DNA of 64,000 nucleotides from Botryllus schlosseri (taxonomy: Eukaryota), in contig CM119372.1 in the NCBI GenBank assembly GCA_051294905.1, positions 12,772,001 through 12,836,000 on the forward strand. Direction: 5' to 3'. The translations under genes were made by a program, and so were the position numbers. Below the pieces are notes generated by a model. It did not search any database, had not been told where the DNA came from, and saw nothing but the letters and a program-made list of their open reading frames with translations. Below, one piece after another: positions 1-25,686 of this stretch. The stretch's first letter is position 1. Each line of letters begins with the position of its first letter.

Positions 1-194
1 ACATCAAGTTCAAGTTAAATCAAGTCATTTTAGGGGAGCATCATTTCAATTTCCTTTTAAAGATAGCGCGGACACGTGTCTAAAAGCCAAGAATTACTGC
101 GTATGCCAATTTTCAGTGTTTGCTTCGCAACAACAACCCCATAAAACATGGCCTGATCACGATCAGTACACACAGAGTAATCATTTTCTCATAC

Positions 195-651
195 TTTGAC
201 TTCTTTCTGTCTTCGTCCCTGTCTGGACTGTCCCGACGTCGCTTGTGCATACGGCGATAGGGCGAGACGTCCCTGGCAACAACAAGAAACATCAGAACTT
301 GGAAAGGAGTCATGCATAGCAAACAACAAACCTTCTCCTGTAACGCGAATAGCTTCCGTTTTCGTACGAAGGATTCTCCAATTTGTAAGCGCTCGGAACG
401 TTGGCGTCGTCGCGGCTGTACTTGCTGCGTCGCGAGTAACTGCCCCTGTCGAAATACGAAAACGCGTGACCGATCTTCTCAACTCACGACCCGGCACCGG
501 CACAAACCCAGATCCTAGTATTTTCCTGTGCGAGGATGGCACGTCCCTTTCGCGACTTCTGGATTTAGTCTGGCCCCTGTGGCGGGGTGAAGCGGTTCCG
601 GATCGTGACCTGCCCGGCGACCGCTCGACGGATTTGCTTGTTGCGCGGCGT
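195..651 (-). CDS. SFSWAP: SFSWAP RS-domain exons 508-651, 332-445, 195-272 (62- and 59-nt introns)
   Basis: [24 protein letters not shown]; [21 protein letters not shown]; [18 protein letters not shown]; two GTTTGT donors, cag acceptors; the final donor is uncertain. Confidence 0.7.
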
Positions 652-3600
652 CTGAACGAAAAATTACCATTCAATTATCACAGACACTTTTTCATCATTT
701 CCACATTGGTACGTGGGGCAGGTAATAAAAATGACAACGACTTTGGTGTTTCAAGAGTATCGAGAGCTTGTATTTTTCAGTATCCAAGACTTGCCGAATT
801 TACTTCAAATTTACGTAGGAGAGAGAGAGAGAGAGAGAGAGCTGAAATTAGTTTTCGCCTGCACTATCCAGATGCTTTGACGACGGGGATGCGATACGGC
901 CGTAAGGTACCCTAGTCTGCTCCATGCTATCCGTGGATGCTGAGCGCCTAGCAGGATAGCCACGGATACCAGTTTCCGAGTCTTTGGTCTGCCCCGGGTG
1001 GGAATCGAGCCACAACTTACCGATCAAGAAGCCGGACGCATCACCATTACACTATCTCGCTCGCTAGGAACTGAAGCTATGAAATGTAGTTTCAGAAAGT
1101 AGATTTGACGGATTGTCGCATAGTTTTGGCAGCTACTTTTGGATTCGCAAGATGCGTCTTCGCGACAAACATAAAACACTGATGCAAATCGATGCCGTTT
1201 TTGAAAATATATTCCGATAGCATGATACAAATGTTATTTTCTACTAATAGCAACGTTAAACAGTAGAATTCCGTCTAAACACCTGTCAAGTAGAGCGGAA
1301 GTGATCGAAAAACTAACACAGGATAGACTTGGGTAGCAACAAATATAGCGCTCAAGCTGAAAAAGGGGTATAAGGCCCTTGCCTTTTACTGTCTCCGCCT
1401 GGCGTGGTGGATCTCGAAGCTGCCACAATCAAATCTTTCAAAGTTCCGGCCGGCTTTGCCGACGACAGCGGCGGTGGAGACGGTTTTCGTTCAACCGACG
1501 GTGACCTCGGTTTCGGCGACTTTTCTTTTTTCAACACCTTTTCAACAGGCTCGATCATGATAACCTGCAGAAGAGAGAATGCAAAAAGGCTTCGCACGAG
1601 AGGATGTGCACTTTCTCTCGCCAGCCAAGACTTGGATACTGTCAGGACCGGCGCATTAGATTCGAGTATGTCTCCATGAGTGACGCACATGATAGGATGA
1701 TAATGGGCTAAACACCGTTTGATCTGGCCGATGCTGAATTACAAATCATCGCGGAAAAGGTGGAATAAGGTACAATTGTTTTGGCCCAGCATTGTATATG
1801 ATTATGCATAGAATTTTCCAGAAGTCTCATTCTAACCGCACCCACGCACATATCTTACAGAAATCGGTTCGATTTTTTCAGTGTCCGATTCTTCTTCTTC
1901 CGAACTGCCGAATATGTCTTCAGAAGCAGGGTTTTTTGTCTTCGATTCTGGCTCTTGCGGGACGGGTGGAGCAGCCTGAAGAACTCGCGAGATGAGAATA
2001 CAAAATAACAGTTTACACAACCTTTTCTAGTAGAGCAGTTTTGCTTCGATTTGAATTGGGAGTCTGCCCACGAATTCGTCCCATTAGACATTCTCCGTTT
2101 GGATGTCAACATGAAATTTCTAACAACTGTGTACCGTCGAGTAATGTCGAGCTTAAGAAAATGATAGCAAGCAGTCCAAGCATCAACGCTAACTATATTT
2201 GAGTATCATGGCAACACAACCCGTCCTGACAAGATTAAATCGAGATCTTGCATTGCTTCACCTATACATACATCCCAACAGCCTGACGGTAGAAACAAAG
2301 ACTGAAACCCTTGTAACAAGGGTGCTCATTACATTGATTGCTATTACTCCTTGGTAGATTTGGTAGACTCAAAGAAACAACGCCTTTTTCAAGTCAACAG
2401 ATACACGAGGTAGAAAAATTGTCGTCGGCAGACCTACATATCCGCAAGGTAGCTTGTGTGGTGATCAAGTGTGAGCACCCCTGCTTAACAGTAATCCAAA
2501 TCTCAAATTCTTACCTTCACATTCTCCAGAGCCAGCTGGGCGGCTTTCTGTCTCCTTTCCTGTTGTTTTTCACGAAATTCCGCAATCGACATGGTGTTGC
2601 CGTCCGGCGTGACGACGGTGAAGTTGGATATGGACGGTGTTGGGATCGGCGCCACAGCTGGTGGCGCGTCCGTGAATTTCCGTTTCGTCTGCTCCAAAAG
2701 TCTACGCTTGTCCTCCTCCGTCATCGAAATCGGCTGCCGAACTTCGGGCTCTTTTTCTGCGGCGAAACGTTGAAGGTATTTGCTTGGTCAATTTCCAACC
2801 ATCAATCTCTACTTATTTACAAAAAGTATCGATTTCCAAGCCAAGTCAGTAGTTTTTAAAAGATAGATGTGGTCACGGGGCAGCGTACTTTTAGCAATTA
2901 ATCGCAGGTTTCAAATTTGTCGCTAACACAAAATGACGAATGATAATAACACTATAAATAGGTGTAATTTTTGAAAATATCTATTCAGTCATGGTGATGC
3001 AGGTGCTATTTTGCTAATTTGTTTGGACCATTTCATTTCAAAATCTACTTCAGCACTTTGTGCTTGCGCAATCCGTAATTATGACATCACAATGACCGAC
3101 GGATTGAAAGATGAAATCTTCTTTCCCCATTACATATGAAACCCAACTAATGGAGATGGAACACAAGAAGAAGAAAAAGAAAACCGTGAAGATCGACGTA
3201 CAAGAGGAAGACAGCGAGAAGAAATCGTCGGAAATTGAACTGAAACACATTGAAAAACTTCTGGAGAGTAGGAATTATTCGGCTTACAGCAAAGGCAGAG
3301 AGGTATGTGCTACTGAGCAATAGTAAACATTGATATACCATACTGAACTTGACCATTATGTAACTGGGTGAACAAGTTGAACATACGCTGTCACTGATGA
3401 TATGGTTCAATTTCCGTGTACGGGAACCTTCTGTTGAATCACATATGGCATTGAAAAATAAAGCCGTGGAAAAAATTTGTGCCACACTACTTCGATGTCA
3501 TATCACATGCAACCAGATATGATAGGATGACTATTGGCCCCTTGACCTGCGAAGTTTGAGTACGGACAGGCACTTTTAAGACCTTGGACAACACAATCAC

Positions 3601-6600
3601 GATAACAAAACTTTATGAATAGACCGGTGGGTATCGTGGTTCGAAAATTGACAGTACAGATCTTTTTGGTGAGAAGTAGAATTTTAACCAAAATTTTTAA
3701 TATAGAACGGAGCGCATTCATCACTCTCCATATTGTCGTTGATATCAAACCCAAGTGCAATTTCAGTACCGATCAATAACGCCGTAGCCTACTGATCAAG
3801 GAGCTGTGTAACAGCAATAGATCCATTTCACTTAGGACCCAAGAGAACGATACGAGACTCCCAAAAGTGAGAGAGAATGGTGGAGAGTAACACTGAGAGA
3901 GACGCCGATACCGGGAACATACCGGAACAAAGATTTCCTCCAAGATGCCGCGACGAATCCGATCAAGGCTACGTACAATTTCGAAGGCAAGTGCCATCTG
4001 GGTGTTAGCAAGTTTCAAGCCGTTCAAGCTAATTGGCAAACACTGGCATATAAAGCAGATATGCTTGGATTAAAATGCAACAAATAGTGTATAGTATAGT
4101 ATAGTAGTATAGTATACAATAGTATATTGCATTTGTTTGCCAGTCGAAAATGAGAAGTTCCAATCTTTGGAACTGTTACGGAATACAACTGACTGCGTAC
4201 ATTCGACGAAACGCAGGGCAAGGCAGGCGTAGACAGAACAGGGTAGCGGGAGACGGCATTCATTTATTGCCGGGTGCGTATCGACACAAGAACTTCGCAG
4301 ACCTTTTGGCAAAGAAGAAAGTCAACAGCTCCTTCAAAAGTTCGGGAAGAGCGCGATCGCCGTGCGGATATCAAGCGAGTCCAATACATCAACGAGATTG
4401 AAAGACGCAAAATTTATCGCCTGTTACACATTTAGGATAAGGAATTGAACATTCCGCCGTGGCATTACAACGTCGTAGACAACCGCCCGTCGACAACGAT
4501 GTCTAGATTGAGCTCCTTCAAGAGTCAATCGTTGCGATTCACGAGCCACCATTTTCAACCCCGCGAGGGACCTTCGCCTGGCGAATACAATCCCTCAGTG
4601 CCATCGTACAGGTGAGAAATACTCGTCGTCGCGTCTGAGCATTTATGTCGCATCTTGCAACAATCCATTATTGGTTCGCTGCTGCTAACGATTTGATTAA
4701 CAATCCCACATTATAGAAATGATTGCTGGATTACAGGCAAGGAGTCTGAGTCGTGACGTTTTTAGTCACATAGAATTGTGATTGACACGGAGCAAAAACC
4801 AAGGGCAATAACATATTCTTGTTAGTGTCCTTTTTTGGTAAGATAAGAAAAAAGGTCATTACTTTGATCCAGTCCTAATCAAGGCCTCCGTGCCATAAAA
4901 AGACATCACCCCTCAAAATAATGTCAATTCTTAGAAATAAGGATGGTATGACAACCTTACATAGAGGAGTCGCAGTTTTTCACATAGTTGGAGTCAAGAG
5001 TCAGAGTTCTAATTAGATTGGAATTTGAAGATTTGAAAACATTTTCAAAGGGGTCCCATCAAAACGGCTGCAACATTTTGACGTATGAATTTCAGTAGTC
5101 GGCAATCAAAACAAGCCATGTCCTACTTTACAAATAGATAACATCTACACTCCATGGCAACGTGCATGCGATTCGCTCCGCGGCGAACCAAACGCAATAT
5201 TCAGCAACTGGTCCCGGGTCCCGGTCAAAGAAAAAACCGTGCCCGCGCTTTTTTTTCGCAGGTACAAAATGTCATCATGCTTCTGCTCCGCGACGCCGCG
5301 ATTTGCAAAAATAAAGAACAAAGACCCCGGCCCTGGGACGTACGAGCCCACGAGGTTTTCCTACCCGCAAAAGCCCACCCTGCGGAGAATGGCCAAAATG
5401 CACGGGCTGTTTTTCAGCCAAACGTTTCAAGTGTGACGACCGACGAAAGCACGAGAATAACACTAACTTGGTTTCACGCCCTCCACGACTGTGATTTCCA
5501 CAAATTTCCTTTTCGATTTATCTTTCGGTTTGGAAGAGTTCGCTGAAATAAAACGAACCGATAAAACTTTCTGGTCGCGTGATACGTTATCTTATTATTA
5601 AGATAATATTGATTGTTATCATCTTTACTTATGTGTTGGTAAATACACAAAGACCCGACTCATCGAGCAGCAGTCACACCAATTTCCAGTAAATATTTAC
5701 GATATTCCTTTTGTTTTAAGTGAAAATCAAGTTTTACTGGTTTGTGCCTTTAACTTCGTGCACCAGAATTCTATCTAGTGATGTATTAGATGCGTAAATG
5801 TGGTAGATTTCCGTTTATATGACTACGTGACTACCGAATGCTTGCAGATGAGCTTAAGGGCTAGCCAGGAGAGATAAGGTTACTATTAATAATATAATTA
5901 CCGTATCTTCTTATAAAGACAAGACAAGACGATACCTTTCGAGCCGTTTCCGGTGCTGTCTTGCTCATCGGAATTGGCGCTGGCGTCCGATTCTTTACCC
6001 TCACGATCTTCCTGGTCGCTTTCTTCCTCCAGCAGCTGAAGCCTTTTTGAAATCAGAGTGGTTTTCGGCACCGTTTCCTTTCCCTTTATCGAGAAGCTGA
6101 TCGGATTCGACTGCTTCTGTTGCTCTTCGGCCGCGGCCTGCTCCTGATTACAAGCGCGCGGTTAAAGATCAGAGGTCACGGCAGCGGCGATCATTAACGA
6201 CGTACTTCTACTTTTCCAGAGTGTTCGAGTAGGTTTTGTCTACTACGTTTTGAGATTAATTCTACTCAACAGTTTCTGATTCAAAGTAGGCTACCTATAA
6301 TTTATGCTTCGACATTCGTGAAATCCCAAGTATTTTATTAGATTGGTGTGTTTCACTTCTGTGAGCGAAATGACGGTAAAAATCGGATAAAACGGCAATG
6401 TATTGTGGTCCCAAGTATATAGTTTCGAAAACCGCTCGATTTGCAGTGTCACCAGACATTTTATGTCGTTAAGATTGATATCGCAATTTCAAATTCAGCC
6501 AACCGCCCGATTTGCTACTAAAAGTATGCGACGTCCCGAACAAATCGAACTTTTTAAGACAACTAGTACCAGTTTCTATACACTTAATTACCTTCCTCTA

Positions 6601-9600
6601 CTCTAACTAGTTTTGACGTGTCTTGAATTTGGTCACCTTTACTTGTTATTTAGCAGAAATTCATGGCGGAACTTTTATTTCTACTCGTGTAGCTGTCGCG
6701 GTGGTCAAAGTATAGTTTTCCAAGTAGAAATGAGGATTTTGGGTGCGAAAAGGCGCGACCGTTCGCTCACCTTTGCTTGCTGCAGCATGCGGTTCCTTGC
6801 TTTTATCTGCTCTCTGATGAAAGTCTTTCGGAAAGTATAGTAAGGATGAAGCTCGTGGGAAGGTTCCAAGAACGCGAGCAGGGCGTCCTTGCGTTCCCGC
6901 ATGCTTTGCTCAACACCGTCGCCTTCCTCAGCAATTTGTCTGCGACGGACATAGAATTGTCAGCGTCAGAGTAAAATACCACAAGAAAACGGCAATGTCA
7001 GGTCAGCAGTGAGATCGTGTCGGCAAACTGCAGGCGTCGATAAAATCGCGACAGCTTACTTCATCAACTCTGCTATGCTTAGACAACAGGCAGATACCGG
7101 CGACAAGAACAACTTGTCTACAAATCATAGGCATTGGAAGACATTTTTGGAGGTACGGGACTCCAGTATACAATTGAATAATTCATTTGTATTGAAATAA
7201 ACCTGTATATTATCGGCTGACACTCATCAGGGGTAGTCGTCAGCAACTAGGAGATACTTCAAAGGTATATCAACAATGGTATCACCAAATACGATGTCAC
7301 CCGCATGAAAATTCAAGTAATCACGGCGAACAGCCATCTGCTACACTTATATATACTAAATCATCTGTAACAGAGACATTAAACCATGTTATGAAGGGAC
7401 AATGAATTAGGTGTCTGCAAACATAAGGGACAATAGGACATGCAACATTTGAGCATGTGGGATAAAGTTGAATTAGGTTTACGGTTTATTTTGCGGTATG
7501 GGTTGTGGTTAGGGTTAGTGGGGGGCTACGAAGTCACATGCTAAACTGTCGATTTTCATTGCGTCGCATGCTCAAATGACAGGCGGCCAAAGTATGACCT
7601 ACAGTTGTTTCAAATTTATAAAGGAAATCAATTCGATCCAATTAATACGACTGCACAAGTCTCTGTCGCTAACGCATAAAAGCCAAACCACTAACTTCGC
7701 AACGCTGTCCACCATGGGTTGAATGTCTGGCGGCGGTGGCACGATCACCATCGCCGCTTCCTGTGGCGTAATGCTGGGGGGCAGCGCGTCCTGATCCCGC
7801 AAAGTCAACGGGCTTGATGAGGCACTCGAGTTTCGACTTGCGCTCTCCATGAATGCCGGTAGCGGTGGCGGCTCCAACGAATTTTCTTTGTCTAAACGCA
7901 CAGATGCGGCAAATACCAGAGATGAGCGCATTAAACATTTTCAAATCCAAATCCAGAATTTATCTTGTATCACGCTTAAATCTAAGTACATACACGGTAA
8001 TGACTTTAAAGTCGCTCGAAAATCGTAAATTGTCAAAAATTCCATGTCCCAGTCCACGTCTAAATCTAGCTCCAGAGAAATCATGAACCTCAAACCGATC
8101 TTAATCAGGTTTTCTCTACCAAATCATCTCTGGTGAAAAACAAAACAGGAAGTCACCCACCTGATGCGTGATTCTGCGTGGCTACTTTCATCAAGTTGTA
8201 CTGACGGAGGGCGTTCGCTTTTTTTCCTTTCTCGATCAGTTTCGCGAGCGGGTGATTGGGGTCGACTTTTTGAATGGCCTGTCACAAAAAGCGGGATGAG
8301 ATATTAATTTATTTCGTCAACCGACAAGGTAAAAAAGTAATGTCCAAATTTGCGGCACAAAACAACGCTCGATTGGTATCGGCTCATTGACTGGTACCGC
8401 TAATATGATCACGATTTTTGGGTCAACCAGAACCAGAGTAATTTCTTGTTCAAACTTTAAGTTAAAAAGAGATATTAGATCGTCATAGAACTTGCTGAAA
8501 ATATATGTAACACAGTGTTTTGTAAGAAAAGAGAAGTAAATTTTAATAAAAGAAAAAATAATATCAACTCAAACTACATTAATATGAATAAAATGTCATA
8601 CAGTCGTTGAGCAGTAATGATAAATACGAGGACGGAGAATACAAACACATCAATTAATGCACGTATGTTAGGGTTGTTCAGAATAGACCGACTTTCAAAA
8701 AGTCCAGGTTTTCAGTCCGATTCCCATGCCTTATACCTTGAAAACATATTCTGGCTACTTTTTTCTGTAACTCGTCCCCTGCATCCGTGTGCACATTGAG
8801 CTGGAAGAATAGCAGCTGAAAATAGGGGATTCCCCTAAAATCTGAGTGTCACGATTTTACCTAGCCTAGTTAAAGTGACATATAACATGGATTTATGCAG
8901 CTGTTGCGGTTTGGAGTGCTACAAAACCCCACTATATAAGGCATTCCTAGTTCAGGATATCATTTCCATGTCCTACACTGCCTTAGAACTGCTCAAAACT
9001 ACCTAAACCTGATAGTCATTTTGTTGGATCACATATCCTACACCCCTCAAACCTACCCGGCACTGTTCATCAATTTCCTGGATCCCCATGTGCAAGAATA
9101 CAACTGTAAATGTAACATCCACTCACAGCCACATAATAAACATCACAGGAAACGAAAAAATAAGGCAAAGAAAGAGATCAGCTTGGCGAAATATTACATA
9201 AATCAGGTGGATGAAATGGTTGATTTCGAGAAATCTGCATATCTGTTCCGGTGATCTTCCACAGCTTGTAGGAGGCTCGCTCGCTGTTTTTTTGTCATCA
9301 GTTATGAACGCAGCATAGTCGGTATTCAATTTTACCATACGCTCTGCTGCATAATAAAGTGCTACAGGAAAAGCACAGGCTGATGCATCATTTGAACTGC
9401 TTGAACTTTGAAATTTAACAAAATCTGTTAGAGCTCTTCTGTTTGACACAACATCCTCAAACACTGGTAAAAACAAAGGTGCGGTTCCGTTACTTGAAGA
9501 ATTGATTAACAGGAAAGTTTTCTACAATGCCTGTAGCCATCATATTTATGAACTGGTCATTGGAGAGGTTTGGAAGTGTTTGTTTGGATCGACAATCACA

Positions 9601-12600
9601 GGCCCTGAAAACACGGATTTTAATACCTTCAAGAAGAAGTGGAAATATATTGATAAATCAAGAAGCTATAAAACGCTGAAGTTTATTGAAGGCAGCTGGT
9701 TGGCGATGAAAGCTGATGAAGCAAAGCAAGAAATAATTCCACTGATGAAACCCAATGATGGAAAGCAGAAAGAAGTCTTGATAAGAGATGACTACAGAGA
9801 ATGTGCAACAGGCACCTTGGCGATTTTGGATGACAAATATGTTGATCATCGTTTTCGCAAGCCTGGTGCTACTCATAGCGCTAGATGGATGAGTCAAGTC
9901 CTGTACTGTCAAAAAATGTTCATGTGGAGTGAGCAAATGGACTATTCTGAAGAGTTCATTGAAAAGTTGGAACGAATCAATACATTCATTGCTTTGTTTT
10001 ATATTCCAGCTTGGTTGAAAACTGGTATTGCATGTGACGCACCTTGGAATGATCTCAAATTCCTTCATGACATGAAAAACTTTTCATTATGCGATCTCAC
10101 TGTTGCTGATGTGTCATACAAGAAATTGCCAAAACATCATTGGTATCTAACTGAGGAAATGGTGGTATTTACCACGTCCTCGGCTAATCCAAAGACTCCT
10201 GACAAACTGAAGGAAGCGATGGCTGCTAAATTGCTGAAAATGCCAATCCCTGAAAAATTTCGCAGAGGTATGCCTCTCAGTCTGATCTCTGACTCTGTCT
10301 CTGAGTCAATGAGTATGGTCGATTTGATTGCGCCAGAATCGTGGTTTCTATTTGATGCTATACATGTGGAACATGATTGGTTGAGTCTTCCAGTTTCGGA
10401 ATGGCATACTGATCCGGATTTCGTGACTGCTCAAGAATTTGTGAATACCGTTGAAGCAGAGCGTATGGTAAAATTGAATACCGAAAATGCTGCGTTCATA
10501 ACGGATGACAAAAAACAGCGAGCGAGCCTCCTACAAGCTGTGGAAGATCACCGGAACAGATATGCAGATTTCTCGAAATCAACCATTTCATCCACCTGAT
10601 TTATGTAATATTTTGCCAAGTTGATCTCTTTCTTTGCCTTATTTTTTCGTTTCCTGTGATGTTTATCATGTGGCTGTGAGTGGATGTTACATCTACAGTT
10701 GTATTCTTGCACATGGGGATCCAGGAAATTGATGAACAGTGCCGGGTAGGTTTGAGGGGTGTAGGATATGTGATCCAACAAAATGACTATCAGGTTTAGG
10801 TAGTTTTGAGCAGTTCTAAGGCAGTGTGGGACATGGAAATGATATCCTGAACCAGGAATGCCTTATATAGTGGGGTTTTGTAGCACTCCAAACCGCAACA
10901 GCTGCATAAATCCATGTTATATGTCACTTTAACTAGGCTAGGTAAAATCGTGACACTCAGATTTTAGGGGAATCCCCTATTTTCAGCTGCTATTCTTCCA
11001 GCTCAATGTGCACACGGATGCAGGGGACGAGTTACAAAAAAAAGTAGCCAGAATATGTTTTTAAGGTATAAGGCATGGGAATCGGACTGAAAACCTGGAC
11101 TTTTTGCAAGTCGGTCAATTCTGAACAACCCTAACGTATGTATACAAGGAATAAATATGAAATAAGGACAGAGTGCAAGCATTGAACAGCATTAGTATTT
11201 ACTTGATAGAAAGTCCAACACGCACGACTAGCGTAGAAGACGTCGACTCACCTTGAATTTTTCCTTTTTCTCCTCTTCCTCCCGCCTGTTTCTCTGAGCA
11301 TTGGCAAACAAGCTCGGATGCAGGTAGCCGCCCTCGTCGTCGCTGTCGGATTCCTGAAAATCACAGAATGAGCGAGCGCGTCAGGGACATCTCGCAAAGA
11401 AGCTAACCTCGTCTTCTTCCTCTTCCGGCACGTCGGTTTTTAGCGCCGGGGTGTGCTTGCCTTCCTTGATTCTTTTCAGCTGTATAACAATCGGAATATG
11501 AGTGAGCATGAGCAATTGAGCATGCAAACCAAATGCGGAAGAACTCCTGTATTCTTCGAGTTCTCGAGTTGGTTTTGCCTACTGACCCTACTTACTACAG
11601 TTTTTGAGGCAAAACTACAGGCGTTTTACAAGTTGGCGTTCGTTAAGTAGACTAAATGGAATATGTTTGTATCACTATTATGGGAGAAAGTGTCATCATA
11701 ACTGCAGGGCGAAATAGCCCCTGTATCAATATATATATATCGGCTTTCAATTAAATAAAAGGGCAAAAAGGGCCACTTCCCTGTATCAAGGCAACCGAGT
11801 GCATCAATTTGTACAGTTTTCAAGTCATTTTGGGTCAGTCACAAAAATCAGCCACCCCCCATTATATGCTCCCCGACCAAAACAACCTTTTTCAACTAGC
11901 CACTTCTGGCGCCTCCATTTTCTACTTTACTTAAATTAGTTTTGACAAGTCTCGGAAACCGTTACTTCCGCATGTAATTGATTACAAATTTACAGTGTTA
12001 CTTTTACCAAAAGACTGCGCACAGTTTGCGACTGAATGTTTTGGGGAAGAAAGAAGACCCGGGTAAGGCTTAGATAAAATCGCGTTGCGTAAAAATATCA
12101 AGATAAAGTTGAACATCATATGCAATACAATATTCTAGAGCAGTGTTTCGCAACGTTTTCGACTCATCGCCCTCTTACAAATCTCGACAAAAATTTCTGC
12201 CCCCCATATTTACGGACTCGAAAAAGAGGACATCGGGAAATAGATTCACCTAACTCTGATCGCAGGTGAATTTACTAAAAAAAGGTCATTTTCCGAGGTG
12301 GTAGGTGCTCGGAAAACCAGTTTCCGCGTCTACTTCCCATTGAGTAGACCTTTTTTCGCGTCATATGCAGAATAAGCCGTCTTCACCTGCATTTTTTTAC
12401 CGTGTTAATTAAATATATCTCACAAGACGATCTAACATTTCCTATCGCTCCTCTGGTATTTTCGTACCCTCGTTTCTCAAAATCGCCCACTGGGGAGCGA
12501 TACCGCCCACGCTTGGAATGGGAACCACCGTTCTAGAGTCAACATCGTTGTGTCTATATTCGTCAAACGCCAACCGTTTACTCACCACGTGCTTGTAGTA

Positions 12601-15210
12601 GGGGTTCAAGTAGTGATCGAAGTCCAAAAACAGAAATTGACTGTTGTTGGCCTGTTTCGCTTTCAGTATAATTTCCATTTGAACACCCTGCTTGCTTACG
12701 AACATCGCCGTCTTCTCAATGATAGCGTGCATCTTTTCCGTCGGAGGCTGGAAAAGCAGCATGCATGAGCGCCGGTTTAAACAGCCAGGACGGCATGTCC
12801 AGCTTATAGTGCTACACCTGACCACCATCTACAGAAGCAGTACAGCGTACATATTTGGAAATGAGCACAGATGAGATTTTTAAATCTTGCTCTATAAGGC
12901 CATTGAAATAGGACAAAGTTTCTCATAACATTCAATATTTTAATGTAAAGAATCATTAATCGGATTTGGGCATGATATGAATTGAACTTGCGATTAGTAT
13001 TTGCATATGTTACTGTTCATTTCAGGTAAACAGGCGTCGAGAGGATACAGTGGTAACTCACAATTTCCATTCGAGGGGGGATTGCAAGCGACTCTGGAGC
13101 CATAAATGGCCTTTCCTCCTCGTCATTTTTATCGCCGCCCTCTACTGGTTGATCGGTGGTGACCGGGTCTGTACTTTTCTGTTCGCCATTTGTAGTATCG
13201 TAGTTGAACGCGACCTGATTGAAGGAATCCCCGCCTTCGATCGACGCATGCAGCCTCTTCAATTCTTCCTCTGCGACAAGGACAGCTAAACTAACTTTCT
13301 ACTCTGACACCTCAGGCAAAAATTCTGATCATACACAAAGAAAATATGTTAGCATTCCTACACATTTTTATATATTATTTCCTCCGAATAGCTTTAGAAG
13401 CCAAAATTACGATGTCATGTTACAATTTATTTCAAGCAGTTTTAGAGAGCGAGATCGCTACAATCAAACTGTGGGTTATAGTTACCTTGCCGTATCACAA
13501 GTGGAGTACCGGCACCATATATATATGAGCTCACGATTTGAAACAGGTTGCCATTGTCAACATAGACAAATCACATTTCTACATTTCAAATTTGATTCAC
13601 CATTTTACTGACATTCACTACCTACGAAAGTCAGTTAAAAATCTTTAGGTGAATAAATCAACAGTATGTATCTATTGTTCCGTGTAATTTTGACAGCTAT
13701 GTTTAATTTTGCATCAATTCTTGTAATCCTCTACTTCCTTAAATCGCAACTCCCATTCATAACTTTTGAGAATTCTCTGGGACCATCGGGATAAACAGGT
13801 CGGCAACACATCTTCATCAAAATCAGAGCTAATACATCATATATTCCGCATTAATTTTAAAGGCACCACTGGCAGCCTCCCATGCATTATTTTACAAATA
13901 TATAACACCATCATCCATCGGCTGTCATATTTACACTCACCATGTCTGAGTTTTTCTTCCGCTATATCAGTGTACATGGCCATGTATCTCTCTTGATCAC
14001 ATAGTTGCTCTATCCTGGCTTCCTCTTCCGAGATCTATATAAACCAAGTAGGATGTCCGTTCTGCTACATCTATATATCATTTATGATAAGCATGAGCAA
14101 CTCACATCGTAATCAGTATTCCACGAGTCTCCTTCAAAATCAGACAGATCATGTAACGACGCCCGTGCATCATATCTTAAATATACAATCGAACAAAGTC
14201 AGGCAGGAGAAGCAACAAAGGTAAATCAGAAGCGTCCTATGAAATTCGAGTTTCCGCACTACAGTTAAAAAGCTCTTCACAGGATTGTTGCTCCTGCCAA
14301 TTGGTCTTACCTGCGTTACAAGGACTAGACCTAACACGAAATCGACATGGCACATATACTGGTGCAAAATTTGTGAATTCAAATAAGTTCTGTCGGACAC
14401 CTATTGCAAAGGAATCCGTAATTCAGCTGACGACAACATATTTAATCTGCAGTGTGTCGTGGTGGGGTACTTTGACTCTGAGGCAAAAATAAAAACACCG
14501 GCAATGTTAGACAAAATGCACTTGCACAAAGGACACTATACATTTGCAATAAGGAAGACATCAAGAGAGTGGAGATTTTCTTCAATTTATAGAAGGAGAA
14601 GCATCAAGAGGATAGTAACTGAGTGTAATCAGTAACCAGTTCATCAATTCAAATTGAACTTGACACCAGGACAGAACCGCTCGTTTATACTAACAATGAA
14701 GCTCAGAAGTTAGGTGAAGAATTTGCAACAAATACATATTAAAAAAACATGAATATTAAAAGGAATTCGAACTTATACAAATAGGTAAACACACCACTGT
14801 CTAGGGCTCATGGACCTGCATTGACTCCCGATAACCGTTCCATTTTCTTCAGTCCGCTTCATGCAACACCGAGGGACCTTATTGTGTAATTTGACCTACC
14901 TTTGATCTTTGTTAGGCGATGCTCACCCGCCTAAAGGCTTCCGGGAGAGCTGACATTTACCCAATCAAAGTGCTGAAATCGAACATTGTCGGGGTACAAA
15001 ACCGGGAGGCAGTAAGAGTCACCTGTCGATCATGAGCTGTAGTTTTTCGTCGCCGTTCCATGGTATTAAATGACGGCCTTTGAAAATATCGCGCGAATGA
15101 TCATCGGGCGGAAATAGCTTGCAGGCATAACCGAACATCAAGAGCTCTTCTTCATTTTTCTCGGGAACGTTTTTCTTGACGTGCTTTTTTTGAAACTGGT
15201 ATCTTGATGT
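195..15210 (-). CDS. SFSWAP: Splicing factor suppressor of white-apricot homolog (multi-exon; DRY_EERY domain, two SURP domains, RS-rich C-terminus); 5' and 3' ends incomplete
   Basis: Hand-spliced exons, all phase-compatible: 15023-15210, 14106-14175, 13941-14034, 13062-13270, 12586-12747, 11408-11479, 11252-11353, 8161-8278, 7696-7891, 6771-6939, 5936-6143, 2515-2756, 1859-1975, 1383-1564, 508-651, 332-445, 195-272. Diagnostic motifs: [120 protein letters not shown]. The last four exon boundaries are less certain. Confidence 0.95.
818..841. repeat. (AG)n microsatellite; others at about 18341-18361 (AG)n, 19175-19215 (TC)n and 4085-4125 (TAGTA)n
   Basis: Visible directly in the sequence. 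Confidence 0.9.
912..1050 (-). mobile_element. tRNA-derived SINE family 1, 3'-truncated copy
   Basis: Reverse complement has an A-box (TAGTGTAATGG), a degenerate B-box and the core CAGACCAAAGAC..CTGGTATCC..GGCGCTCAGCAT shared with the copy at 16294. Confidence 0.75.
1383..2756 (-). CDS. SFSWAP: SFSWAP exons 2515-2756, 1859-1975, 1383-1564
   Basis: ..[22 protein letters not shown]|[13 protein letters not shown]|[13 protein letters not shown]; the last donor is AG|GCAAGG (GC). Confidence 0.82.
3150..5436 (+). CDS. STPG4: STPG4-like (sperm-tail PG-rich repeat / gonad-specific) protein, about 270 aa, 5 exons, nested in an SFSWAP intron
   Basis: Exons 3150 (or 3111)-3302, 3836-3986, 4217-4374, 4436-4611, 5262-5436. 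Collinear with vertebrate STPG4/C2orf61 as remembered: [104 protein letters not shown] at 5547-5552. Confidence 0.87.
5936..6143 (-). CDS. SFSWAP: SFSWAP exon ([12 protein letters not shown], acidic tract)
   Basis: atcag|GAG acceptor, AAAG|gtatcg donor; frame open throughout. Confidence 0.88.
6771..8278 (-). CDS. SFSWAP: SFSWAP exons 8161-8278, 7696-7891, 6771-6939 (SURP2)
   Basis: [14 protein letters not shown]..; ..[18 protein letters not shown]|[38 protein letters not shown]; phases 1/2/0 match. Confidence 0.92.
8669..11133 (+). mobile_element. hAT-superfamily DNA transposon derivative (probably hATm-like lineage) with about 680-bp inverted arms
   Basis: Ends TAGGGTTG...CAACCCTA; 8-bp TSD ACGTATGT at 8661-8668 and 11134-11141; arms 8669-9348 and 10455-11133 nearly identical in inverted orientation. 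Confidence 0.92.
9358..10599 (+). pseudogene. 5'-truncated DDE transposase (central and C-terminal part)
   Basis: Frame reads [30 protein letters not shown] (TGA at a position that is usually W), CSHH (CxxH), [35 protein letters not shown]-terminal DNA-binding region and first catalytic Asp are absent. Confidence 0.85.
11252..11479 (-). CDS. SFSWAP: SFSWAP exons 11408-11479 and 11252-11353 (54-nt intron)
   Basis: [24 protein letters not shown]|[23 protein letters not shown]. Confidence 0.9.
12141..12530. mobile_element. hAT (Charlie-type) MITE
   Basis: CAGTGTTTCGCAAC...GGGAACCACCG ends; TSD TTCTAGAG at 12133-12140 and 12531-12538; internal segment shared with about 39950-40120. Confidence 0.85.
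12586..12747 (-). CDS. SFSWAP: SFSWAP SURP1 exon
   Basis: [54 protein letters not shown]; ccag acceptor, gtgagt donor. Confidence 0.95.
13062..13270 (-). CDS. SFSWAP: SFSWAP exon ([32 protein letters not shown])
   Basis: gcag|AG acceptor, ATT|gtgagt donor; matches the SFSWAP linker before SURP1. Confidence 0.92.
13941..14175 (-). CDS. SFSWAP: SFSWAP DRY_EERY exons 14106-14175 and 13941-14034 (71-nt intron)
   Basis: [23 protein letters not shown]|[31 protein letters not shown]; GTGAGT donors, AG acceptors. Confidence 0.92.
15023..15210 (-). CDS. SFSWAP: SFSWAP exon, start of DRY_EERY domain
   Basis: ctag|ACATCA...ATCGACAG|gtgact; encodes [48 protein letters not shown]. No in-frame ATG upstream of the domain start. 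Confidence 0.93.
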
Positions 15211-18731: not shown

Positions 18732-19175
18732 GCTACCAAATCTACGAACACTCGAACAGTTTCAACTGGAGCAATATTCTATCTATTCTATACTAGCGTG
18801 AGTATTGAGATTGCCGGATCGATCTTCGACGTTCTGACCTCGCCTATATCCCGTCCATGATATTTCGTAACATGATTTTTCGTCACTTGTCCCCTTTTTG
18901 ATAATTCAGATTGTTATTTCTCATTGAGTGTAGGCCTACAAGTGCAGTATATGTGCACGATGCACGTGCATTGTGCAAATGTGCATATGTGCATTTGTGC
19001 ATGCGTCCTTATAACTTTTTCCGTATTTGATGCTAAATTTATTGGAAGTTAAGAGTGACTTCATCAAGTATAGTTGCAACTATACTTCCTTCCTTGCTTT
19101 CTGTGGTATCTTGAATCGATGCAAGTGGAATAAAACGATACCGCTGGCATAGCAATTTACATGCTGCTGGTGATA

Positions 19176-19219
<44 letters not shown>

Positions 19220-19775
19220 TTGAATAATTCAACTATGTTCAACAACTACTTTCGTCACCAAAAATTTCAAAAGGAAATGCACTTTTTTTTAGAACTGTTG
19301 ACGTATAAGTCGAATTGGTAGGCCTAGCCTATATAATTATAATCGAAACCGACAAGCTCGCAAGACATATTCCATTCCGGAAGGCTATTTCCCGCAATAG
19401 CTGATATATAAGTAGGCTACTTCGTGATGACTGCTGACTAGACCAGTTATCACCTCTCAATATCAGAGGCTACTTATGTGGATATAGGTCTAGCTAGGCC
19501 TACCGTTGACGGAATTGAAAAAAACTTTATGTCTCCGTCACTTTTTATTAATTTATATCACCTCCAATCGCACAATTTTTACATATATAGCAGTGTTGAA
19601 ACCGTTTCATAAATAGTGTCAATCCAACACCACTCACCTTAAATCATCATTAAATACAAATGCTATATGTTGTTATATATCTAATCTCATGTATACCCAG
19701 GGTCGATGTTATATGTAATGCGAGTCGGAGTACCTGTGTTACCGCTGTACCAAAATCAGTCACGGTATGTCATCT

Positions 19776-20194
19776 TCACATATTGTTCATCAGATGTAAA
19801 TCTGGGATATCGTTATTGCGGTAGTTATTATTGGACGAGGAGACTTCTGGCTCCCCGGTGTCATCAACAGCAGATCCACTTCTCCGAAATAAAAACGGAA
19901 CTCCTCTTCGAAAGAGGGATGACATTACAGCACGGCGGTCTTCATCCTTGTACGAGTCTCCTTGACGCATCGGTGAGCCATTGTATTTCAACTGATGTCT
20001 GAGAAGACTGTTCTTTCGAAAAAGGCTGGGAATAGCTCGATGCGGGTACGCCTCGTACCTGGGACTTTCATGTCCAATACTTCTTGACGCCTGGTACGAT
20101 ACGGGATTTCCTCCGCGTGGAGAGTCAAGGAGAATATCAGACGGATATTCGGTTCGTACGTCTAGGGGAGCAGTGTCCACACCATAGATTTCAT
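19776..20194 (-). CDS. Terminal exon of a candidate neuropeptide precursor (LF-peptide type)
   Basis: ctaat..tttatag| acceptor (phase 1); 138-codon open frame with R-AIPSLF-RK, RR-AVMSSLF-RR, RR-GVPFLF-RR separated by acidic/Ser spacers. Signal-peptide exon not located; a candidate upstream phase 1-1 exon lies at 23135-23191. Confidence 0.65.
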
Positions 20195-20345
20195 CTATAA
20201 ACATACATTAGACCTCGTCGAGATGAGAAGACTCAACAAAAAAAACTCAACAAATTCAGAAGGTTACGATTGTTAATATCCATAGAAATAGATCATATGT
20301 GGGATGATAAATAGATACACGCCGACATCGTCACGGTGGAATCAA

Positions 20346-20547
20346 AGTAGATTATGTCCATTTTTGCAAATTTTAAGATTCATTTTTTAAATTGATAGAA
20401 AATCAAGATTTTGTAATATTTTCTTAATTTTTGGCTATATCTTGGTCATGTTTCAAAGTAAGTCATGGTTAAGATATGGCCGAAAGAAAATGAAAACTTT
20501 ACATAAACTTAATTCTCTCAAAATGTGTAAAATGGACATAAGCTACT
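20346..20547. mobile_element. Small AT-rich MITE-like element
   Basis: About 20-bp TIR AGTAGATTATGTCCATTTT / AAAATGGACATAAGCTACT; no clear TSD. Confidence 0.45.
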
Positions 20548-22857
20548 ATGATGATGACGATGTGCTGAAGCCATGGGATGTAAATCTAGGAATGGGCGTG
20601 AAAAGATAAATTTCAGCAATGCTGTGACATTGCAGGTACATTATGACTAACTCCGACAACCAACAAACAAAAACGTAACAACCTCAAAAGTACATTGAGC
20701 TCGTCATTCCATCATTTCCTGGGGATGTCAGAATTTTTGTGAATTGCTTCAACTGGCACGATATATTTCATCGTATAAATGAAAACAAAGTATAACCGAT
20801 TTTCTATTGCATTTGAAATGTTTTCAGACGCGATTTTCAAAAAGTCCCGACAGATTCGCATCTGTTACCGATCGCTATTGCGATTAGTAGGGGAGATGTG
20901 GTACCGATAGATCAAAAACCAGCATGCAATTGTAGAAAAATTCACGGAGTGTTGGCTAATCATGGGATTATCATAGAGATTTTTTCAAGTTTTTTCGGTC
21001 CCAGTGTCTCATCGGTACCACATACCCCTATTCTACACCTACAGCCTACAATCATTTTAGCGAAAAGAGTGTGTATTCACAACCAAAGGGCAGGAAAGGG
21101 TGGTACGCGAACAAGGAACCTAACTATAAGGTAATACGTCCATGATACAAGAAATGCCTAAAACGATGCGATTTCATTTACGAACCAGATTTACGACGGG
21201 GTGCTTTGTTGTGTAATCTTGATAAGTTATTGATAATTCTGTAATCCTCGGCAGTCTGTTCCTGGAATCAAAATAAAACGTTATCTAATCCAATATCCAA
21301 TTTCAAATAGATTATAGAAAATTCAAATCGTTCTTTCCTATCTTTGAGCGTGCTGTACCGTAATGTCGAAATCGATAACTCCAAACTGCTTAGCGTTTCG
21401 ATCGTGTCATTTTGATATCCTTGTTATGATATTTTGTAAAATTTACAAAAATATCCGACGTTCTTTTTACAAATCACATTTTTGCAAGTAGGTTACTTCG
21501 TGTTCAGGCGAGTACAGTCAGTGACATTTTATCCATATGATCATTGAAACGGACTCGTGGCGCACACAAAAATATATTACGTATACTTCTACATTATCAG
21601 AGTACTCAAAGTGCTGATTACGCTGGAAATTTCGCATTTATTCTGTTTATGATCCTTCTCGACTACTTTGTGAATTGGATTTTAGAATATACTGCCAAAT
21701 AATAACTATGTACAGAGTGTATGAATACACTTCTTTGATTTAGGCGGTGAAATTTTCAGATACAGTGCGCAATGTCCCAAACACAGAAAATGTATAGTGA
21801 CTGAAACGTACCTTAAAGTACCTGTTAGACATTCACAATAATCGCCATCTGTCAGGCGATACTCGAGAGTCGAATTTTACATAAGATGCAGCAGCTCAAC
21901 AGCAAGTGAGGATCAGCGCAACCCGCAAGCGTATTCACCATTGTTTTGCAGCCGATTGAACATTCACACTCTCATTCTCGCTGCGCACTTGCTCCTGAGC
22001 TGCGGCATCTTATTCCAGACGGCATTGTTGCGTCGCAATGGAAAACTCCGATGTAAAATTCTTGGCTGATTTTTGGGGTTCCAGGACCACGAGTAGAATA
22101 AAATTTATTTATTAGTAATCAGTACCGTGATTGCCAATTTTATCAAATTTTGAGGTCGGCAAACTTGTTTAAATACTGGCGTAAATTGCCTTTGGTCAAA
22201 CGGAAGGATGACGTACACCAACCGCAGTGAGCCGTGAAATTTGCTTGTGTCCCAACCACTTTAGGACACTATGATACATTGACCATCTCTGTAGTTCCCA
22301 GGAGAGACGGATTGATTAGAGAAGTAATAGACTTACTCAACATTCACCTATGAAGCACTCAATTATATTTAACGGTACTGCAAAACAATGATATAAATTA
22401 TATACACATTGTGTAAAACATATAACGAACCTGGTTAGGCAAGATTCTGTAGTCTGATTCGATTTCAAAGCCTTGTGTAACAACCAAGCAAACTGTAATT
22501 GTAGTAACAGGTTGGAAACGAAAATCTGATTAACAATATAGAAAGTCCTTGTTGAAATATTACCTGACAGAAATGCCAATGTATACAACCGCCCTGTTCC
22601 CTCTCGACTCATCGTTCGTAAGGATAATATGGCAAACGTGAAGTCCGTGTTTGGTCGATAAGCAGATTTTCACAGAGAAGAATGCAATGAGACCTCACAT
22701 TTGCGACTGCTTTATATCCATTCGTGGTTAGCGTTGGAAAAAAGGCAAATTGGCCGTGCATTACATAGTCTTGTGAGTGGGGTCATAGCCTACTACAATA
22801 TACCATTTGACATGGTGGCGAAATAAATGTATGATATGATGTATGAAATAAATGTAT

Positions 22858-23012
22858 GATCCACAGCTGCAACATCAATGGGTTGCGGGTCCGAGTCCGA
22901 CTCCAACCTGTATCTTACTGGTGCATGTTTAGCTAGGGGCCGCCTCGCCATCTGATCCGCGCGATCGGTGTTTAAAAAGCCTAGAAGTGGGTCGTGCTGC
23001 AAGTTGGCAGAT
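22858..23012 (+). mobile_element. tRNA-derived SINE family 2 copy
   Basis: CACAGCTGCAACA..GGGTCCGAGTCCGAC..GATCCGCG..AAAAAGCCTAGAAGTGGG shared with 55458, 57190 and 61318. Confidence 0.7.
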
Positions 23013-25686
23013 GCGTAATCATAATAAAGAATATCGGTCTGGTTTAAATGACCATTGGAGTCGGAGAACCTCTCGAATACCACAAACAACAGCAGGCATT
23101 TGACATGGACGTGCAGCCGTGGCTATATACATACCCGATGCAGAACCTTCTGGTTCAATCAGACCAGCATACTCGATCCGCAGGTATATTCCTGAGCACA
23201 CATAGAAACAAATTCCTATAATTAATCGATTTGAACCCGGCTTCGGTCAATTAGTAAAGGAGCGTGGGTACAAATTAACATGTTCATTGCTCATACCGGA
23301 GCTGCTGGAATTTTTGTCGACGAATGCCTCGTCTCAATTGCGAATTTGCGAAGTACTTTCATATTAGGATCATTTCTGTACATTATTTACCACCGTTTAC
23401 ACACGTAGGACATCCAATGATGCCCCGACGCCGTTATCATATTATGTGATATAACTTCGTCACGATTTTTTTCTGACAAGACTTCTCCTCGCCGCCGCGA
23501 AATACGATGATGCGAAGCGATGTGAAATTGTTTCGTTCGGGGTCACGGATAAGCATGTTTATTCTATTACTTGAGTTTCGAAATATCTCTCCCCCTCCAT
23601 TCTATCTGGGCTTCTACGAAGAGATGGGCCTAATAGAGCCACTTATTTTAAAACTTTATGTATTTGATTTTGTAGCAGATTAGGTTAGACTTGGTGCGTT
23701 TGTCATATTCACTGCTTTTATCATGAATATTGCATATGGCCTTGGGAAAACGGAACATTGTTCTCAAACACAATCAAATACGCAAACATAAAAGCGCAGT
23801 ACCGCGAACTTATGACAAACTATATGTAGTTCCGCGGGTGCCAATTTAGCTAATGTAGGCGTATATTCCCCACCTCCAACTATATTCATGGCATTTCTTA
23901 GTTCTTACACAGAAGGTATAAGTGCAAAACGAATCCTAGATCTGATTTTAATATTATGTACTTGTAAGGCAACATGATCACACTGCAAGATACTAGATCA
24001 AATATTTTCGGAGATAGTATTCACACTCGTCTGAATATGAGATTCATCCAAGAACGGCAGGTCAGTCCTGAGGGGATTAATTAAAATATTAACGGTCGTC
24101 TCCAGAATGACCTTCATACAACGAGAAATATTTGTCGATTAACTATATTTGTAATGTGATATAGTCAGGGTTGCCATACCGTCCTTATTTCTAAGATTTG
24201 TCCTTATTTTGAAGGGTCATGTCTTAGAAATCTCAACTGTCCTTATTTCTAAGAAATGTCCTTATTTTCGACTTGCGTCCTTATTTTGTCTTATTTTTAA
24301 CCACTACAGAACTCCGATCGTTTTCCTCTGATATCTGTGTTGCATATTATTCTAAAATTATGCTTTTGCGTGGAGATTTTATGACATCATAAATGAAAGG
24401 AACTCTCGTGTCGTACACATCACAAGATTTGACTTCTAAGTGGTGAGATAGCTAGGGCAGTGGGTGGTATAGCAGTTTCGTGAGTACCAAGCTACCGCAG
24501 CGGACGTCATGTTAGCAGTAAACAGCAGTACCAGGTTCCTGCTTTTTGGTCTACAGCAGAATAAGCTCAAGCTGTGGCCTGTGGGGAAGGCAGCATTTAT
24601 TGCTCAGTGCAAAAGGCGAAGGGCAGTCGACACATTGATTAAACAGTAGTAAAGCTATAAATCTTTGATATATTTATCTAAATTATACTGCACTTGCGCA
24701 TATAGTTTTAGCTACTAATAACGCTAAATCTGATTAGTTAAAATGAGCAGGCGTAAAAACGTTTTTCATGACGATTAGGAGAGAGAATTAAAAAATATCT
24801 AACGAGGCTTGAAGGCGAGTGTTTCGCACATTGCAATATCTGCCACTGCGACATTAACCTGGAGGCTATGGAAAAGACCGCTATTTCAACTCACATTGGT
24901 ACCCCAAAACACAAGAAGCGTGTCATAATAATTAATTTGAGCCAGTCCATGAATAATTTTTCCACTAGTCGATCAACACCAACGACCACAGACTACAAGG
25001 CAGCTGCTGCTGAGGGTAGCTGGGCATTCCATACTGTCAAACAGGGCTGTGGAGTCGGTAAATTTTACCACCGACTCCGGCTCCGACTCCGACTGCACAC
25101 ATTTTCAATATACCGACTCCGACTCCGACTCCGACTCCTGGGTTTTTAAACGTACCGACTCCGACTCCGACTCCCGACTCCGACTCCAGCATTATTATCA
25201 ATTTACTGCGAAAATTATATGCCACATTGTCGGCTGAATGACTATCATACAACCATTAAACATATGCAAACATATGATTAACTGTGGCATTGTGGCACAG
25301 CTCGAATTATCCACTATATGCAATTAACATGAAATAAAGATTTGCTAAATATCCTTCCTTATTCAAATTTTTATAACATGGACTCTCTAATATCCTGAAA
25401 TGTATGAATCATTCAAATATGGCAGATATCCAATCCTGTAAAATAAAAATGTAGATAAAAAATCCAAGTGCAGCTCTTGTGTATGACTCAGCAACTAATA
25501 AAGAAATTGAACTTACTAATTTTGTCATTGCACACTATCCTGATTACAAGCACAAACACTCTTACTACTAATAATAGACATTGGTCATAAATGGAATTTA
25601 GTTAAGTAGTCAAAGACCATAGCCTATGTCTTGTCTACATGTACTTAATCAAGTATTCAAGGATTGGGACTTGCAGTCTTTCTTAA

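What the first reader, a model, noticed from the sequence alone, without database searches (positions are those of the whole stretch)
19776..20194. Candidate neuropeptide precursor with three non-amidated LF peptides
Seen: AIPSLF (20019-20036), AVMSSLF (19911-19931) and GVPFLF (19887-19904) each follow R or RR, are followed by RK or RR, and end in LF with no amidation Gly, within an acidic/Ser-rich spacer context. Established: convertase cleavage at basic sites; Ciona has an LF-peptide family with free C-terminal -LF. Inference: a divergent LF-family or new precursor. The two tandem peptides AVMSSLF-RR-GVPFLF do not match the Ciona LF sequences I recall. A clean phase 1-1 exon at 23135-23191 (IYLRIEYAGLIEPEGSAS) could splice directly to it; the signal-peptide exon was not found.
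Basis: partly seen in the sequence, partly recalled or inferred. Interest (0 to 1): 0.72.

Follow-up and report, generated by a model that had tools for sequence, protein, structure and literature searches.

The report
Sea-squirt LF-peptide precursor gene
The flagged stretch is the last exon of a real, spliced, single-copy sea-squirt gene for a small secreted protein. That protein looks built to be cut into three short peptides ending in Leu-Phe, a peptide type so far reported only in the sea squirt Ciona.

Summary
On the minus strand, 19776-20194 is an open exon encoding HR-AIPSLF-RK and RR-AVMSSLF-RR-GVPFLF-RR at the stated coordinates.

RNA data show it is the terminal exon of a four-exon mRNA. 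All three introns are GT..AG. The exons are:
- 22685-22564
- 22492-22431
- 21261-21186
- 20194 to about 19525

The spliced ORF is 201 aa. It starts at ATG 22612, below an in-frame stop.

Three LF+dibasic motifs never arose in 200,000 composition-matched shuffles. SNPs among individuals give pN/pS of about 0.3 with no stops, and the peptide cores are nearly untouched.

No homologue, paralogue or Pfam domain was found. The genome is an ascidian, probably Botryllus schlosseri (inferred).

The best reading is a prepropeptide of the Ciona CiLF type, and a candidate ligand gene for the "presumable LF receptors" reported in Botryllus. Three things remain untested: neural expression, the mature peptides, and orthology to Ciona cilf.

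The parts
22711..22716 (-). TATAAA box, 31 nt upstream of the apparent transcript start
   Evidence: Sequence read. Reads stop matching at 22685 (table 7).
22564..22685 (-). Exon 1: 5'UTR 22685-22613 with an in-frame stop, then ATG at 22612 (A at -3) and codons 1-16 plus one base. Followed by a GT donor.
   Evidence: joint 22492|22564 (one X1 contig, 8 X20 reads), and X1 contig record 5 reaching 22672. for sequence and frame. The loose letters beyond 22685 are heterogeneous and absent from the genome, so this is taken as the 5' end.
22493..22563 (-). Intron 1, 71 nt, GT..AG, phase 1; it splits the signal peptide
   Evidence: table 5 (skips 71, CT..AC on the + strand).
22431..22492 (-). Exon 2, 62 nt: end of the signal peptide (to 22470, Gly24) and start of the propeptide
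   Evidence: joints 22492|22564 and 21260|22430 (cut +1 gives GT..AG).
21262..22430 (-). Intron 2, 1169 nt, GT..AG, phase 0
   Evidence: table 5 (X1 and X4 contigs, 2 X20 reads).
21186..21261 (-). Exon 3, 76 nt: codons 38-62 plus one base; ends in the basic cluster RRK (residues 59-61)
   Evidence: joints 21260|22430 and 20194|21186.
20195..21185 (-). Intron 3, 991 nt, GT..AG, phase 1; contains a dispersed repeat of about 115 bp
   Evidence: table 5 (X1 and X4 contigs; X20 loose ends at 21209 read across the same junction on another allele).
19525..20194 (-). Exon 4 (terminal): CDS 20194-19779, stop 19778-19776, 3'UTR of about 250 nt. The 3' end is approximate.
   Evidence: depth: 7-10x in X20 over 19800-20199, against 0.5x in the next intron bin. 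The X4 421-nt contig covers 19767-20187 without gaps..
20019..20036 (-). Predicted peptide AIPSLF (residues 116-121), after HR and before RK
   Evidence: no SNP listed inside it (table 3).
19911..19931 (-). Predicted peptide AVMSSLF (residues 151-157), between RR and RR
   Evidence: SNPs: one synonymous change, and A151S in one haplotype.
19887..19904 (-). Predicted peptide GVPFLF (residues 160-165), between RR and RR
   Evidence: no SNP listed.
19544..19549 (-). AATAAA polyadenylation signal
   Evidence: sequence. X20 depth falls to about 0.5 in the 19200-19599 bins.

Best explanation
This is a single-copy, TATA-driven, four-exon gene on the minus strand (about 22685 to 19525). It encodes a 201-aa prepropeptide. 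Shown: the exon structure, the open frame across all junctions, and transcription in three independent studies. Inferred: residues 1-24 act as a signal peptide, cut after Thr-Gln-Gly. The Cys-free, hydrophilic proprotein then enters the regulated secretory pathway. Subtilisin-like prohormone convertases cut at RRK(59-61), R115, RK(122-123), RR(149-150), RR(158-159) and RR(166-167). A carboxypeptidase E-type enzyme trims the basic residues. This releases AIPSLF, AVMSSLF and GVPFLF with free C-terminal Leu-Phe, because no Gly amide donor is present. These would act as secreted signalling peptides in the way of the Ciona CiLF neuropeptides, most likely on class A GPCRs of the tunicate LF-receptor clade.
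For: Transcript: one search gives three GT..AG joints. One error-free 383-nt X1 contig spans all four exons. Support comes from studies P1 (X1), P2 (X4) and P9 (X20 raw RNA-seq). Exon depth exceeds intron depth. The exon is single copy in the genome, so this is not a retrocopy.

Coding: a 606-nt ORF stays open across three junctions, with an in-frame stop upstream of the ATG. There are 26 listed SNPs, 13 synonymous and 13 non-synonymous, and none is nonsense. pN/pS is 0.29-0.38, P = 0.002-0.012. A 3.8%-divergent haplotype has no indel across 421 nt.

Secretion: the only hydrophobic stretch is residues 9-21 (mean Kyte-Doolittle 2.47, against at most 0.76 elsewhere). It follows a charged n-region and precedes T-Q-G. 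The mature part has no Cys.

Processing design: LF[KR][KR] three times occurred in 0 of 200,000 shuffles. All basic clusters but one flank LF peptides. The 29 codons of peptides plus flanking basic residues carry only two synonymous changes and one conservative change (A151S).

Precedent: the CiLF peptides FQSLF, GNLHSLF, SPGMLGLF and others are 5-9 aa with free -LF and come from one precursor (PMC12441681 Table S1). Presumable LF receptors exist in Botryllus schlosseri (PMC6475428).
Against: No homologue was found anywhere, so conservation of the motifs across species is untested. Descent from Ciona cilf is unshown.

There are only three LF copies, against eight in Ciona.

The N-terminus of AIPSLF needs cleavage at a single Arg.

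The signal peptide was judged by rule and hydropathy. SignalP was not available.

Neural expression, co-expression with PC2/CPE and the mature peptides were not examined. One RNA run (X24) shows no reads on the gene.

Constraint on the protein as a whole is only moderate.
Confidence: 0.6

Rival explanations
1. It is a real secreted small protein or bioactive-peptide precursor, but not a neuropeptide. Examples would be a blood-cell, tunic or immune product, such as ascidian antimicrobial pre-propeptides, or a disordered secreted protein that is not cut at the LF sites.
For: The gene, ORF and signal-like N-terminus are shown, but the tissue of expression is not. Ascidians make pre-propeptides in blood cells (botryllin abstract, PMC9966394, listed). 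Depth in a bulk RNA run is fairly high for a gene expressed in few neurons.
Against: After trimming, the predicted products are 6-7 residue neutral hydrophobic peptides. They are not the cationic amphipathic peptides of 20 or more residues typical of antimicrobials. The threefold LF+dibasic design is far beyond chance and matches a known neuropeptide family of a related animal.
Confidence: 0.27
2. It is a spliced non-coding or young transcript whose long ORF and LF motifs have no protein function.
For: There is no homologue in 1.84 billion representative proteins, no Pfam domain and no Atlas neighbour. ORFs of this length occur by chance in the window.
Against: The frame stays open across three junctions and starts at the first ATG after an in-frame stop, followed by a signal-like segment. 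pN/pS is about 0.3, and divergent haplotypes carry no stop or frameshift. The motif enrichment is P < 1e-5.
Confidence: 0.08
3. The exon is the disordered C-terminal tail of a larger multi-domain protein. This was my starting guess.
For: It is a phase-1 acceptor terminal exon with low-complexity, Ser/Arg/Asn-rich sequence.
Against: RNA shows only three short upstream exons. There is a transcript start at about 22685 below a TATA box, and an in-frame stop before the ATG. The whole protein is 201 aa.
Confidence: 0.03

Closest known systems
Ciona CiLF (Ci-LF) neuropeptide precursor, gene cilf KY.Chr10.936 (PMC12441681, PMC6475428)
   Same: A single small precursor carries several short peptides (5-9 aa in Ciona, 6-7 aa here). 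They end in a free, non-amidated Leu-Phe and are bounded by basic cleavage sites. Two peptides here end in -SLF, like CiLF-1 (FQSLF) and CiLF-8 (GNLHSLF). Both animals are ascidians.
   Different: There are three peptides here, not eight. The peptide sequences differ apart from the C-terminal motif. No sequence similarity was detectable by search, although the Ciona precursor itself could not be retrieved for a direct alignment. Neural expression, mass-spectrometric detection and receptor activation are all shown for Ciona and none here.
Other Ciona 'species-specific' non-amidated peptide precursors (CiNTLP, CiYFV/L)
   Same: Short peptides with hydrophobic free C-termini (-IL, -IV, -FV, -FL) released from multi-copy precursors at basic sites.
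   Different: The C-terminal motifs differ. None ends in -LF.
Generic metazoan multi-copy neuropeptide prohormones (for example FMRFamide/LFRFamide-type or enkephalin-type precursors; from general knowledge)
   Same: A signal peptide, acidic or Ser-rich spacers, repeated peptides bounded by dibasic sites, and no folded domain.
   Different: There is no amidation Gly, and no sequence motif is shared with those families.

Membership tests
Ciona-type LF neuropeptide family (CiLF) | Several short peptides with a free C-terminal Leu-Phe encoded in one precursor | tested here: met
   AIPSLF, AVMSSLF and GVPFLF lie in one 201-aa ORF.
Ciona-type LF neuropeptide family (CiLF) | Peptides bounded by mono- or dibasic convertase sites, with no Gly amide donor | tested here: met
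   HR|..|RK, RR|..|RR|..|RR. 0 of 200,000 shuffles reproduce the pattern.
Ciona-type LF neuropeptide family (CiLF) | N-terminal signal peptide on the precursor | tested here: met
   Residues 1-24 have a charged n-region, a 13-residue h-region (KD 2.47) and T-Q-G before the predicted cut. This was judged by rule and hydropathy; no SignalP run was possible.
Ciona-type LF neuropeptide family (CiLF) | Sequence homology or orthology to cilf (KY.Chr10.936) | tested here: inconclusive
   An exhaustive phmmer search and a word-based search found nothing at all. Whether the Ciona precursor is in those libraries is unknown. Neither it nor the Ciona locus could be fetched for alignment or synteny.
Ciona-type LF neuropeptide family (CiLF) | Expression in peptidergic neurons of the cerebral ganglion | not tested
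   Transcription is shown in bulk RNA.
Ciona-type LF neuropeptide family (CiLF) | Mature peptides detected by mass spectrometry | not testable with these tools
   Predicted [M+H]+ values are 647.376, 754.380 and 679.381.
Ciona-type LF neuropeptide family (CiLF) | Activation of LF-receptor clade GPCRs | not testable with these tools
   PMC6475428 reports presumable LF-R sequences in Botryllus schlosseri.
Neuropeptide / peptide-hormone prepropeptide (generic) | A small secreted protein without a folded domain, whose constraint is concentrated on the peptides and cleavage sites | tested here: inconclusive
   No Pfam domain and no Cys in the mature part. The 29 peptide and cleavage-site codons carry 2 synonymous and 1 conservative SNP. 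The other 172 codons carry 11 synonymous and 12 non-synonymous SNPs. The direction is right, but the numbers are too small to be significant on their own.

The most novel reading that the evidence does not exclude
The LF neuropeptide system has been described as Ciona-specific. On this reading it is instead ancestral to ascidians, and this gene is its first ligand precursor outside Ciona. Its three peptides would be the natural agonists of the orphan 'presumable LF receptors' of Botryllus. That would give a ligand-receptor pair whose co-evolution can be followed across the two major ascidian lineages.
Probability: 0.35. Interest if true: 0.6.

Novelty: new member of a known kind. Interest (0 to 1): 0.5.

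Why it matters
[quoted passage not shown] Their receptors nevertheless have presumed counterparts in Botryllus and Oikopleura.

A transcribed LF-type precursor in a distant ascidian would do three things:
- supply the missing ligand side;
- make receptor deorphanisation in a colonial model tunicate directly testable with three cheap synthetic peptides;
- show how fast such precursors drift beyond the reach of sequence searches.

The protein searches run here returned no protein containing this exon.

Tried and rejected
- Homology. phmmer of the terminal exon against 1.84 billion representatives gave 0 hits. The word-based search at E up to 10 gave 0. Pfam gave 0. The ESM Atlas had no usable neighbour.
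- Paralogues in the own genome. The whole exon and the 31-aa peptide core each matched only themselves.
- Genome-wide pattern for two tandem LF-dibasic motifs. It gave 402 matches against 954 for the reversed control. That is no excess, and only about 100 were listed, so other LF genes cannot be excluded.
- Literature. The three peptide strings appear in no held paper. No LF peptides outside Ciona were found, nor any Botryllus neuropeptide catalogue. The original 2011 Ciona peptidomics paper is not held.
- A further 5' exon or spliced leader at 22685. The loose-end consensus is heterogeneous (agreement 0.6) and absent from the window and the genome. No AG precedes 22685.
- Rfam and tRNA scans of the window found nothing.
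- The whole 201-aa spliced protein has no stored reference, so it was not sent to the fold or search tools. Only the contiguous terminal exon was.

Full report
**1. What is in the sequence**

On the minus strand, 19776-20204 is a 142-codon open frame.

The three peptides sit exactly where stated:
- HR-AIPSLF-RK at 20019-20036
- RR-AVMSSLF-RR at 19911-19931
- GVPFLF-RR at 19887-19904

None has a Gly before its basic pair.

ORF length alone means little. The window holds nine ORFs of 139 aa or more and 55 stop-to-stop frames of 100 aa or more.

The motif is not chance:
- Shuffling the mature protein's own residues 200,000 times never gave three LF[KR][KR].
- Any dipeptide repeated three times before a dibasic pair appeared 6 times in 200,000.
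- No other long ORF in the window shows the pattern.

**2. It is a gene**

I laid two transcriptome-contig runs and two raw RNA-seq runs on 19000-24999. This gave three joints, each CT..AC on the plus strand, which is GT..AG on the minus strand:
- 20194|21186
- 21260|22430, which is canonical with the cut shifted by one, giving exons 22431-22492 and 21186-21261
- 22492|22564

One error-free 383-nt contig of X1 crosses all three joints. X4 (a second study) and X20 (raw reads, a third study) support them too. X20 reads at 21209 also carry the exon 4/exon 3 junction on a divergent allele.

In X20, depth is 7-10x over the terminal exon. It is 0.5x in the first 200-base intron bin and zero in the next four.

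The exon is single copy in the 495.5-Mb assembly, so the joined form is not a retrocopy.

No joint touches it, and both raw-read RNA runs are at zero depth from 23000 to 24000.

**3. Anatomy of the gene**

- A TATAAA box lies at 22716-22711, 31 nt upstream of 22685.
- Reads stop matching at 22685. The overhanging letters are heterogeneous, occur nowhere in the genome, and are not preceded by an AG. I take 22685 as the transcript start.
- The 5'UTR contains an in-frame stop.
- The ATG at 22612 has A at -3.
- The introns are 71, 1169 and 991 nt, in phases 1, 0 and 1.
- The stop codon is 19778-19776.
- AATAAA lies at 19549-19544, and depth fades below about 19500.

The mRNA is about 0.93 kb and the CDS is 606 nt, or 201 codons.

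**4. The protein**

Residues 1-24 read MSREGTGRLYTLAFLSVCLVVTQG. They consist of a charged n-region, a 13-residue hydrophobic core (mean Kyte-Doolittle 2.47) and small or neutral residues at -3 and -1.

Nothing else in the protein exceeds 0.76 on a 9-residue window. The only Cys is inside this segment. I could not run SignalP, so this step rests on rule and hydropathy.

The rest is hydrophilic and rich in Ser, Arg, Asp, Asn and Pro, with no Pfam domain.

The basic clusters are RRK 59-61, RK 122-123, RR 149-150, RR 158-159 and RR 166-167. All but the first abut an LF peptide.

**5. Selection**

The runs come from other individuals and differ from the reference by up to 3.8% (16 differences in a 421-nt contig, with no gaps). 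Of the 26 best-supported coding SNPs:
- 13 are synonymous and 13 are not;
- none is nonsense;
- pN/pS is 0.29-0.38;
- the binomial P is 0.002-0.012, depending on the assumed transition bias.

The 29 codons of peptides plus flanking basic residues carry two synonymous changes and A151S. The spacers carry 12 amino-acid changes. One is L127R, common in all three runs, which creates an extra RR. Another is R59S in the first basic cluster (read from the loose ends).

The pattern is what a peptide precursor predicts. The counts are too small to prove that constraint is concentrated on the peptides.

**6. What organism**

I tested this in two ways.
- GH6-like domains, which in animals are a tunicate hallmark as part of the cellulose synthase acquired by gene transfer (from general knowledge), are present on contig C9.
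- The assembly has 495.5 Mb, about 41% G+C, 3-4% haplotype divergence and matches on sixteen numbered large contigs. This fits the haplotype assemblies of Botryllus schlosseri (496 and 494 Mb, 3.63% heterozygosity, 40.5% GC, 16 chromosomes; PMC12448946).

The species name remains an inference.

**7. Comparison with what is known**

Ciona makes CiLF-1 to -8 from a single precursor. Examples are FQSLF, YPGFQGLF, HNPFLPDLF, SPGMLGLF, SDARLQGLF, YPNFQGLF and GNLHSLF. They have free C-terminal LF and were detected in the cerebral ganglion by mass-spectrometry imaging (PMC12441681). Six of them have cognate class A GPCRs (PMC6475428).

[quoted passage not shown] It also finds a urochordate LF-R clade with presumable receptors in Botryllus schlosseri and Oikopleura.

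The gene here has the same architecture and the same C-terminal motif. Two of its three peptides end in -SLF, like CiLF-1 and CiLF-8. It works like a CiLF precursor.

Membership by descent is not shown. Neither the exhaustive nor the word-based protein search returned any hit. I could not retrieve the Ciona precursor or its locus for alignment or synteny.

No held paper contains the three peptide strings or reports LF peptides outside Ciona.

**8. Verdict**

The most likely mechanism has four steps:
1. The signal peptide is removed.
2. Convertases cut at the basic sites, including one monobasic site for AIPSLF.
3. A carboxypeptidase trims the basic residues.
4. Three non-amidated LF peptides are secreted and act on LF-receptor-clade GPCRs.

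Shown: the transcript, splicing, open frame, purifying selection and motif enrichment. Inferred: secretion, processing, neural expression, receptor and homology to cilf.

The main rival is a secreted peptide or protein with a non-neural role. A non-coding reading is unlikely, and the "tail of a large protein" reading is excluded.

I rate it a new member of a known kind, of moderate interest.

Noticed in passing
window 24160-24330: A dispersed repeat of about 170 bp. The genome holds at least 1000 candidate copies, at 94-97% identity on many chromosomes. It is very abundant in all four RNA runs, with many different loose ends, which suggests a young SINE- or MITE-like element. It has no Rfam or tRNA match.
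   Followed up: partly
window 20919-21035 (inside intron 3 of the gene): A dispersed repeat of about 115 bp with more than 1700 candidate copies at 85-90% identity. A 29-nt stretch of the query just outside it (window 20886-20914) also matches the opposite strand at the far end of several copies, so the element is MITE-like with inverted ends. It explains the high contig depth at 20800-20999.
   Followed up: partly
window 20002, and about 21198: Polymorphisms that alter basic sites. L127R is the common allele in all three runs and creates an extra RR in the spacer after AIPSLF. R59S, on one allele, changes RRK to SRK. The number of cleavage sites therefore varies among individuals.
   Followed up: partly
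window 20185-20194: In run X20, one allele differs from the reference in the first codons of the terminal exon. Its loose-end consensus ends ...CCCGTTTCAT where the reference has ...CCATAGATTTCAT. This could be a small in-frame indel, but it was not resolved.
   Followed up: no
window 1-15000, minus strand: The downstream neighbour is an SFSWAP-type splicing-factor gene. It has a Surp module at 12442-12828 (Pfam E = 1.9e-16) and an RS-rich ORF at 189-674. An ORF of a dead hAT transposon lies at 9502-10599 (earlier scan note).
   Followed up: partly
window 19170-19224: A (GA)n microsatellite lies downstream of the gene's 3' end. The read tool skipped it as a repeat.
   Followed up: no
G000:C9:15025585-15068854: Two GH6-like (PF01341) matches about 43 kb apart, in open frames of 531 and 545 aa. 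They are consistent with tandem tunicate cellulose-synthase-type genes.
   Followed up: no
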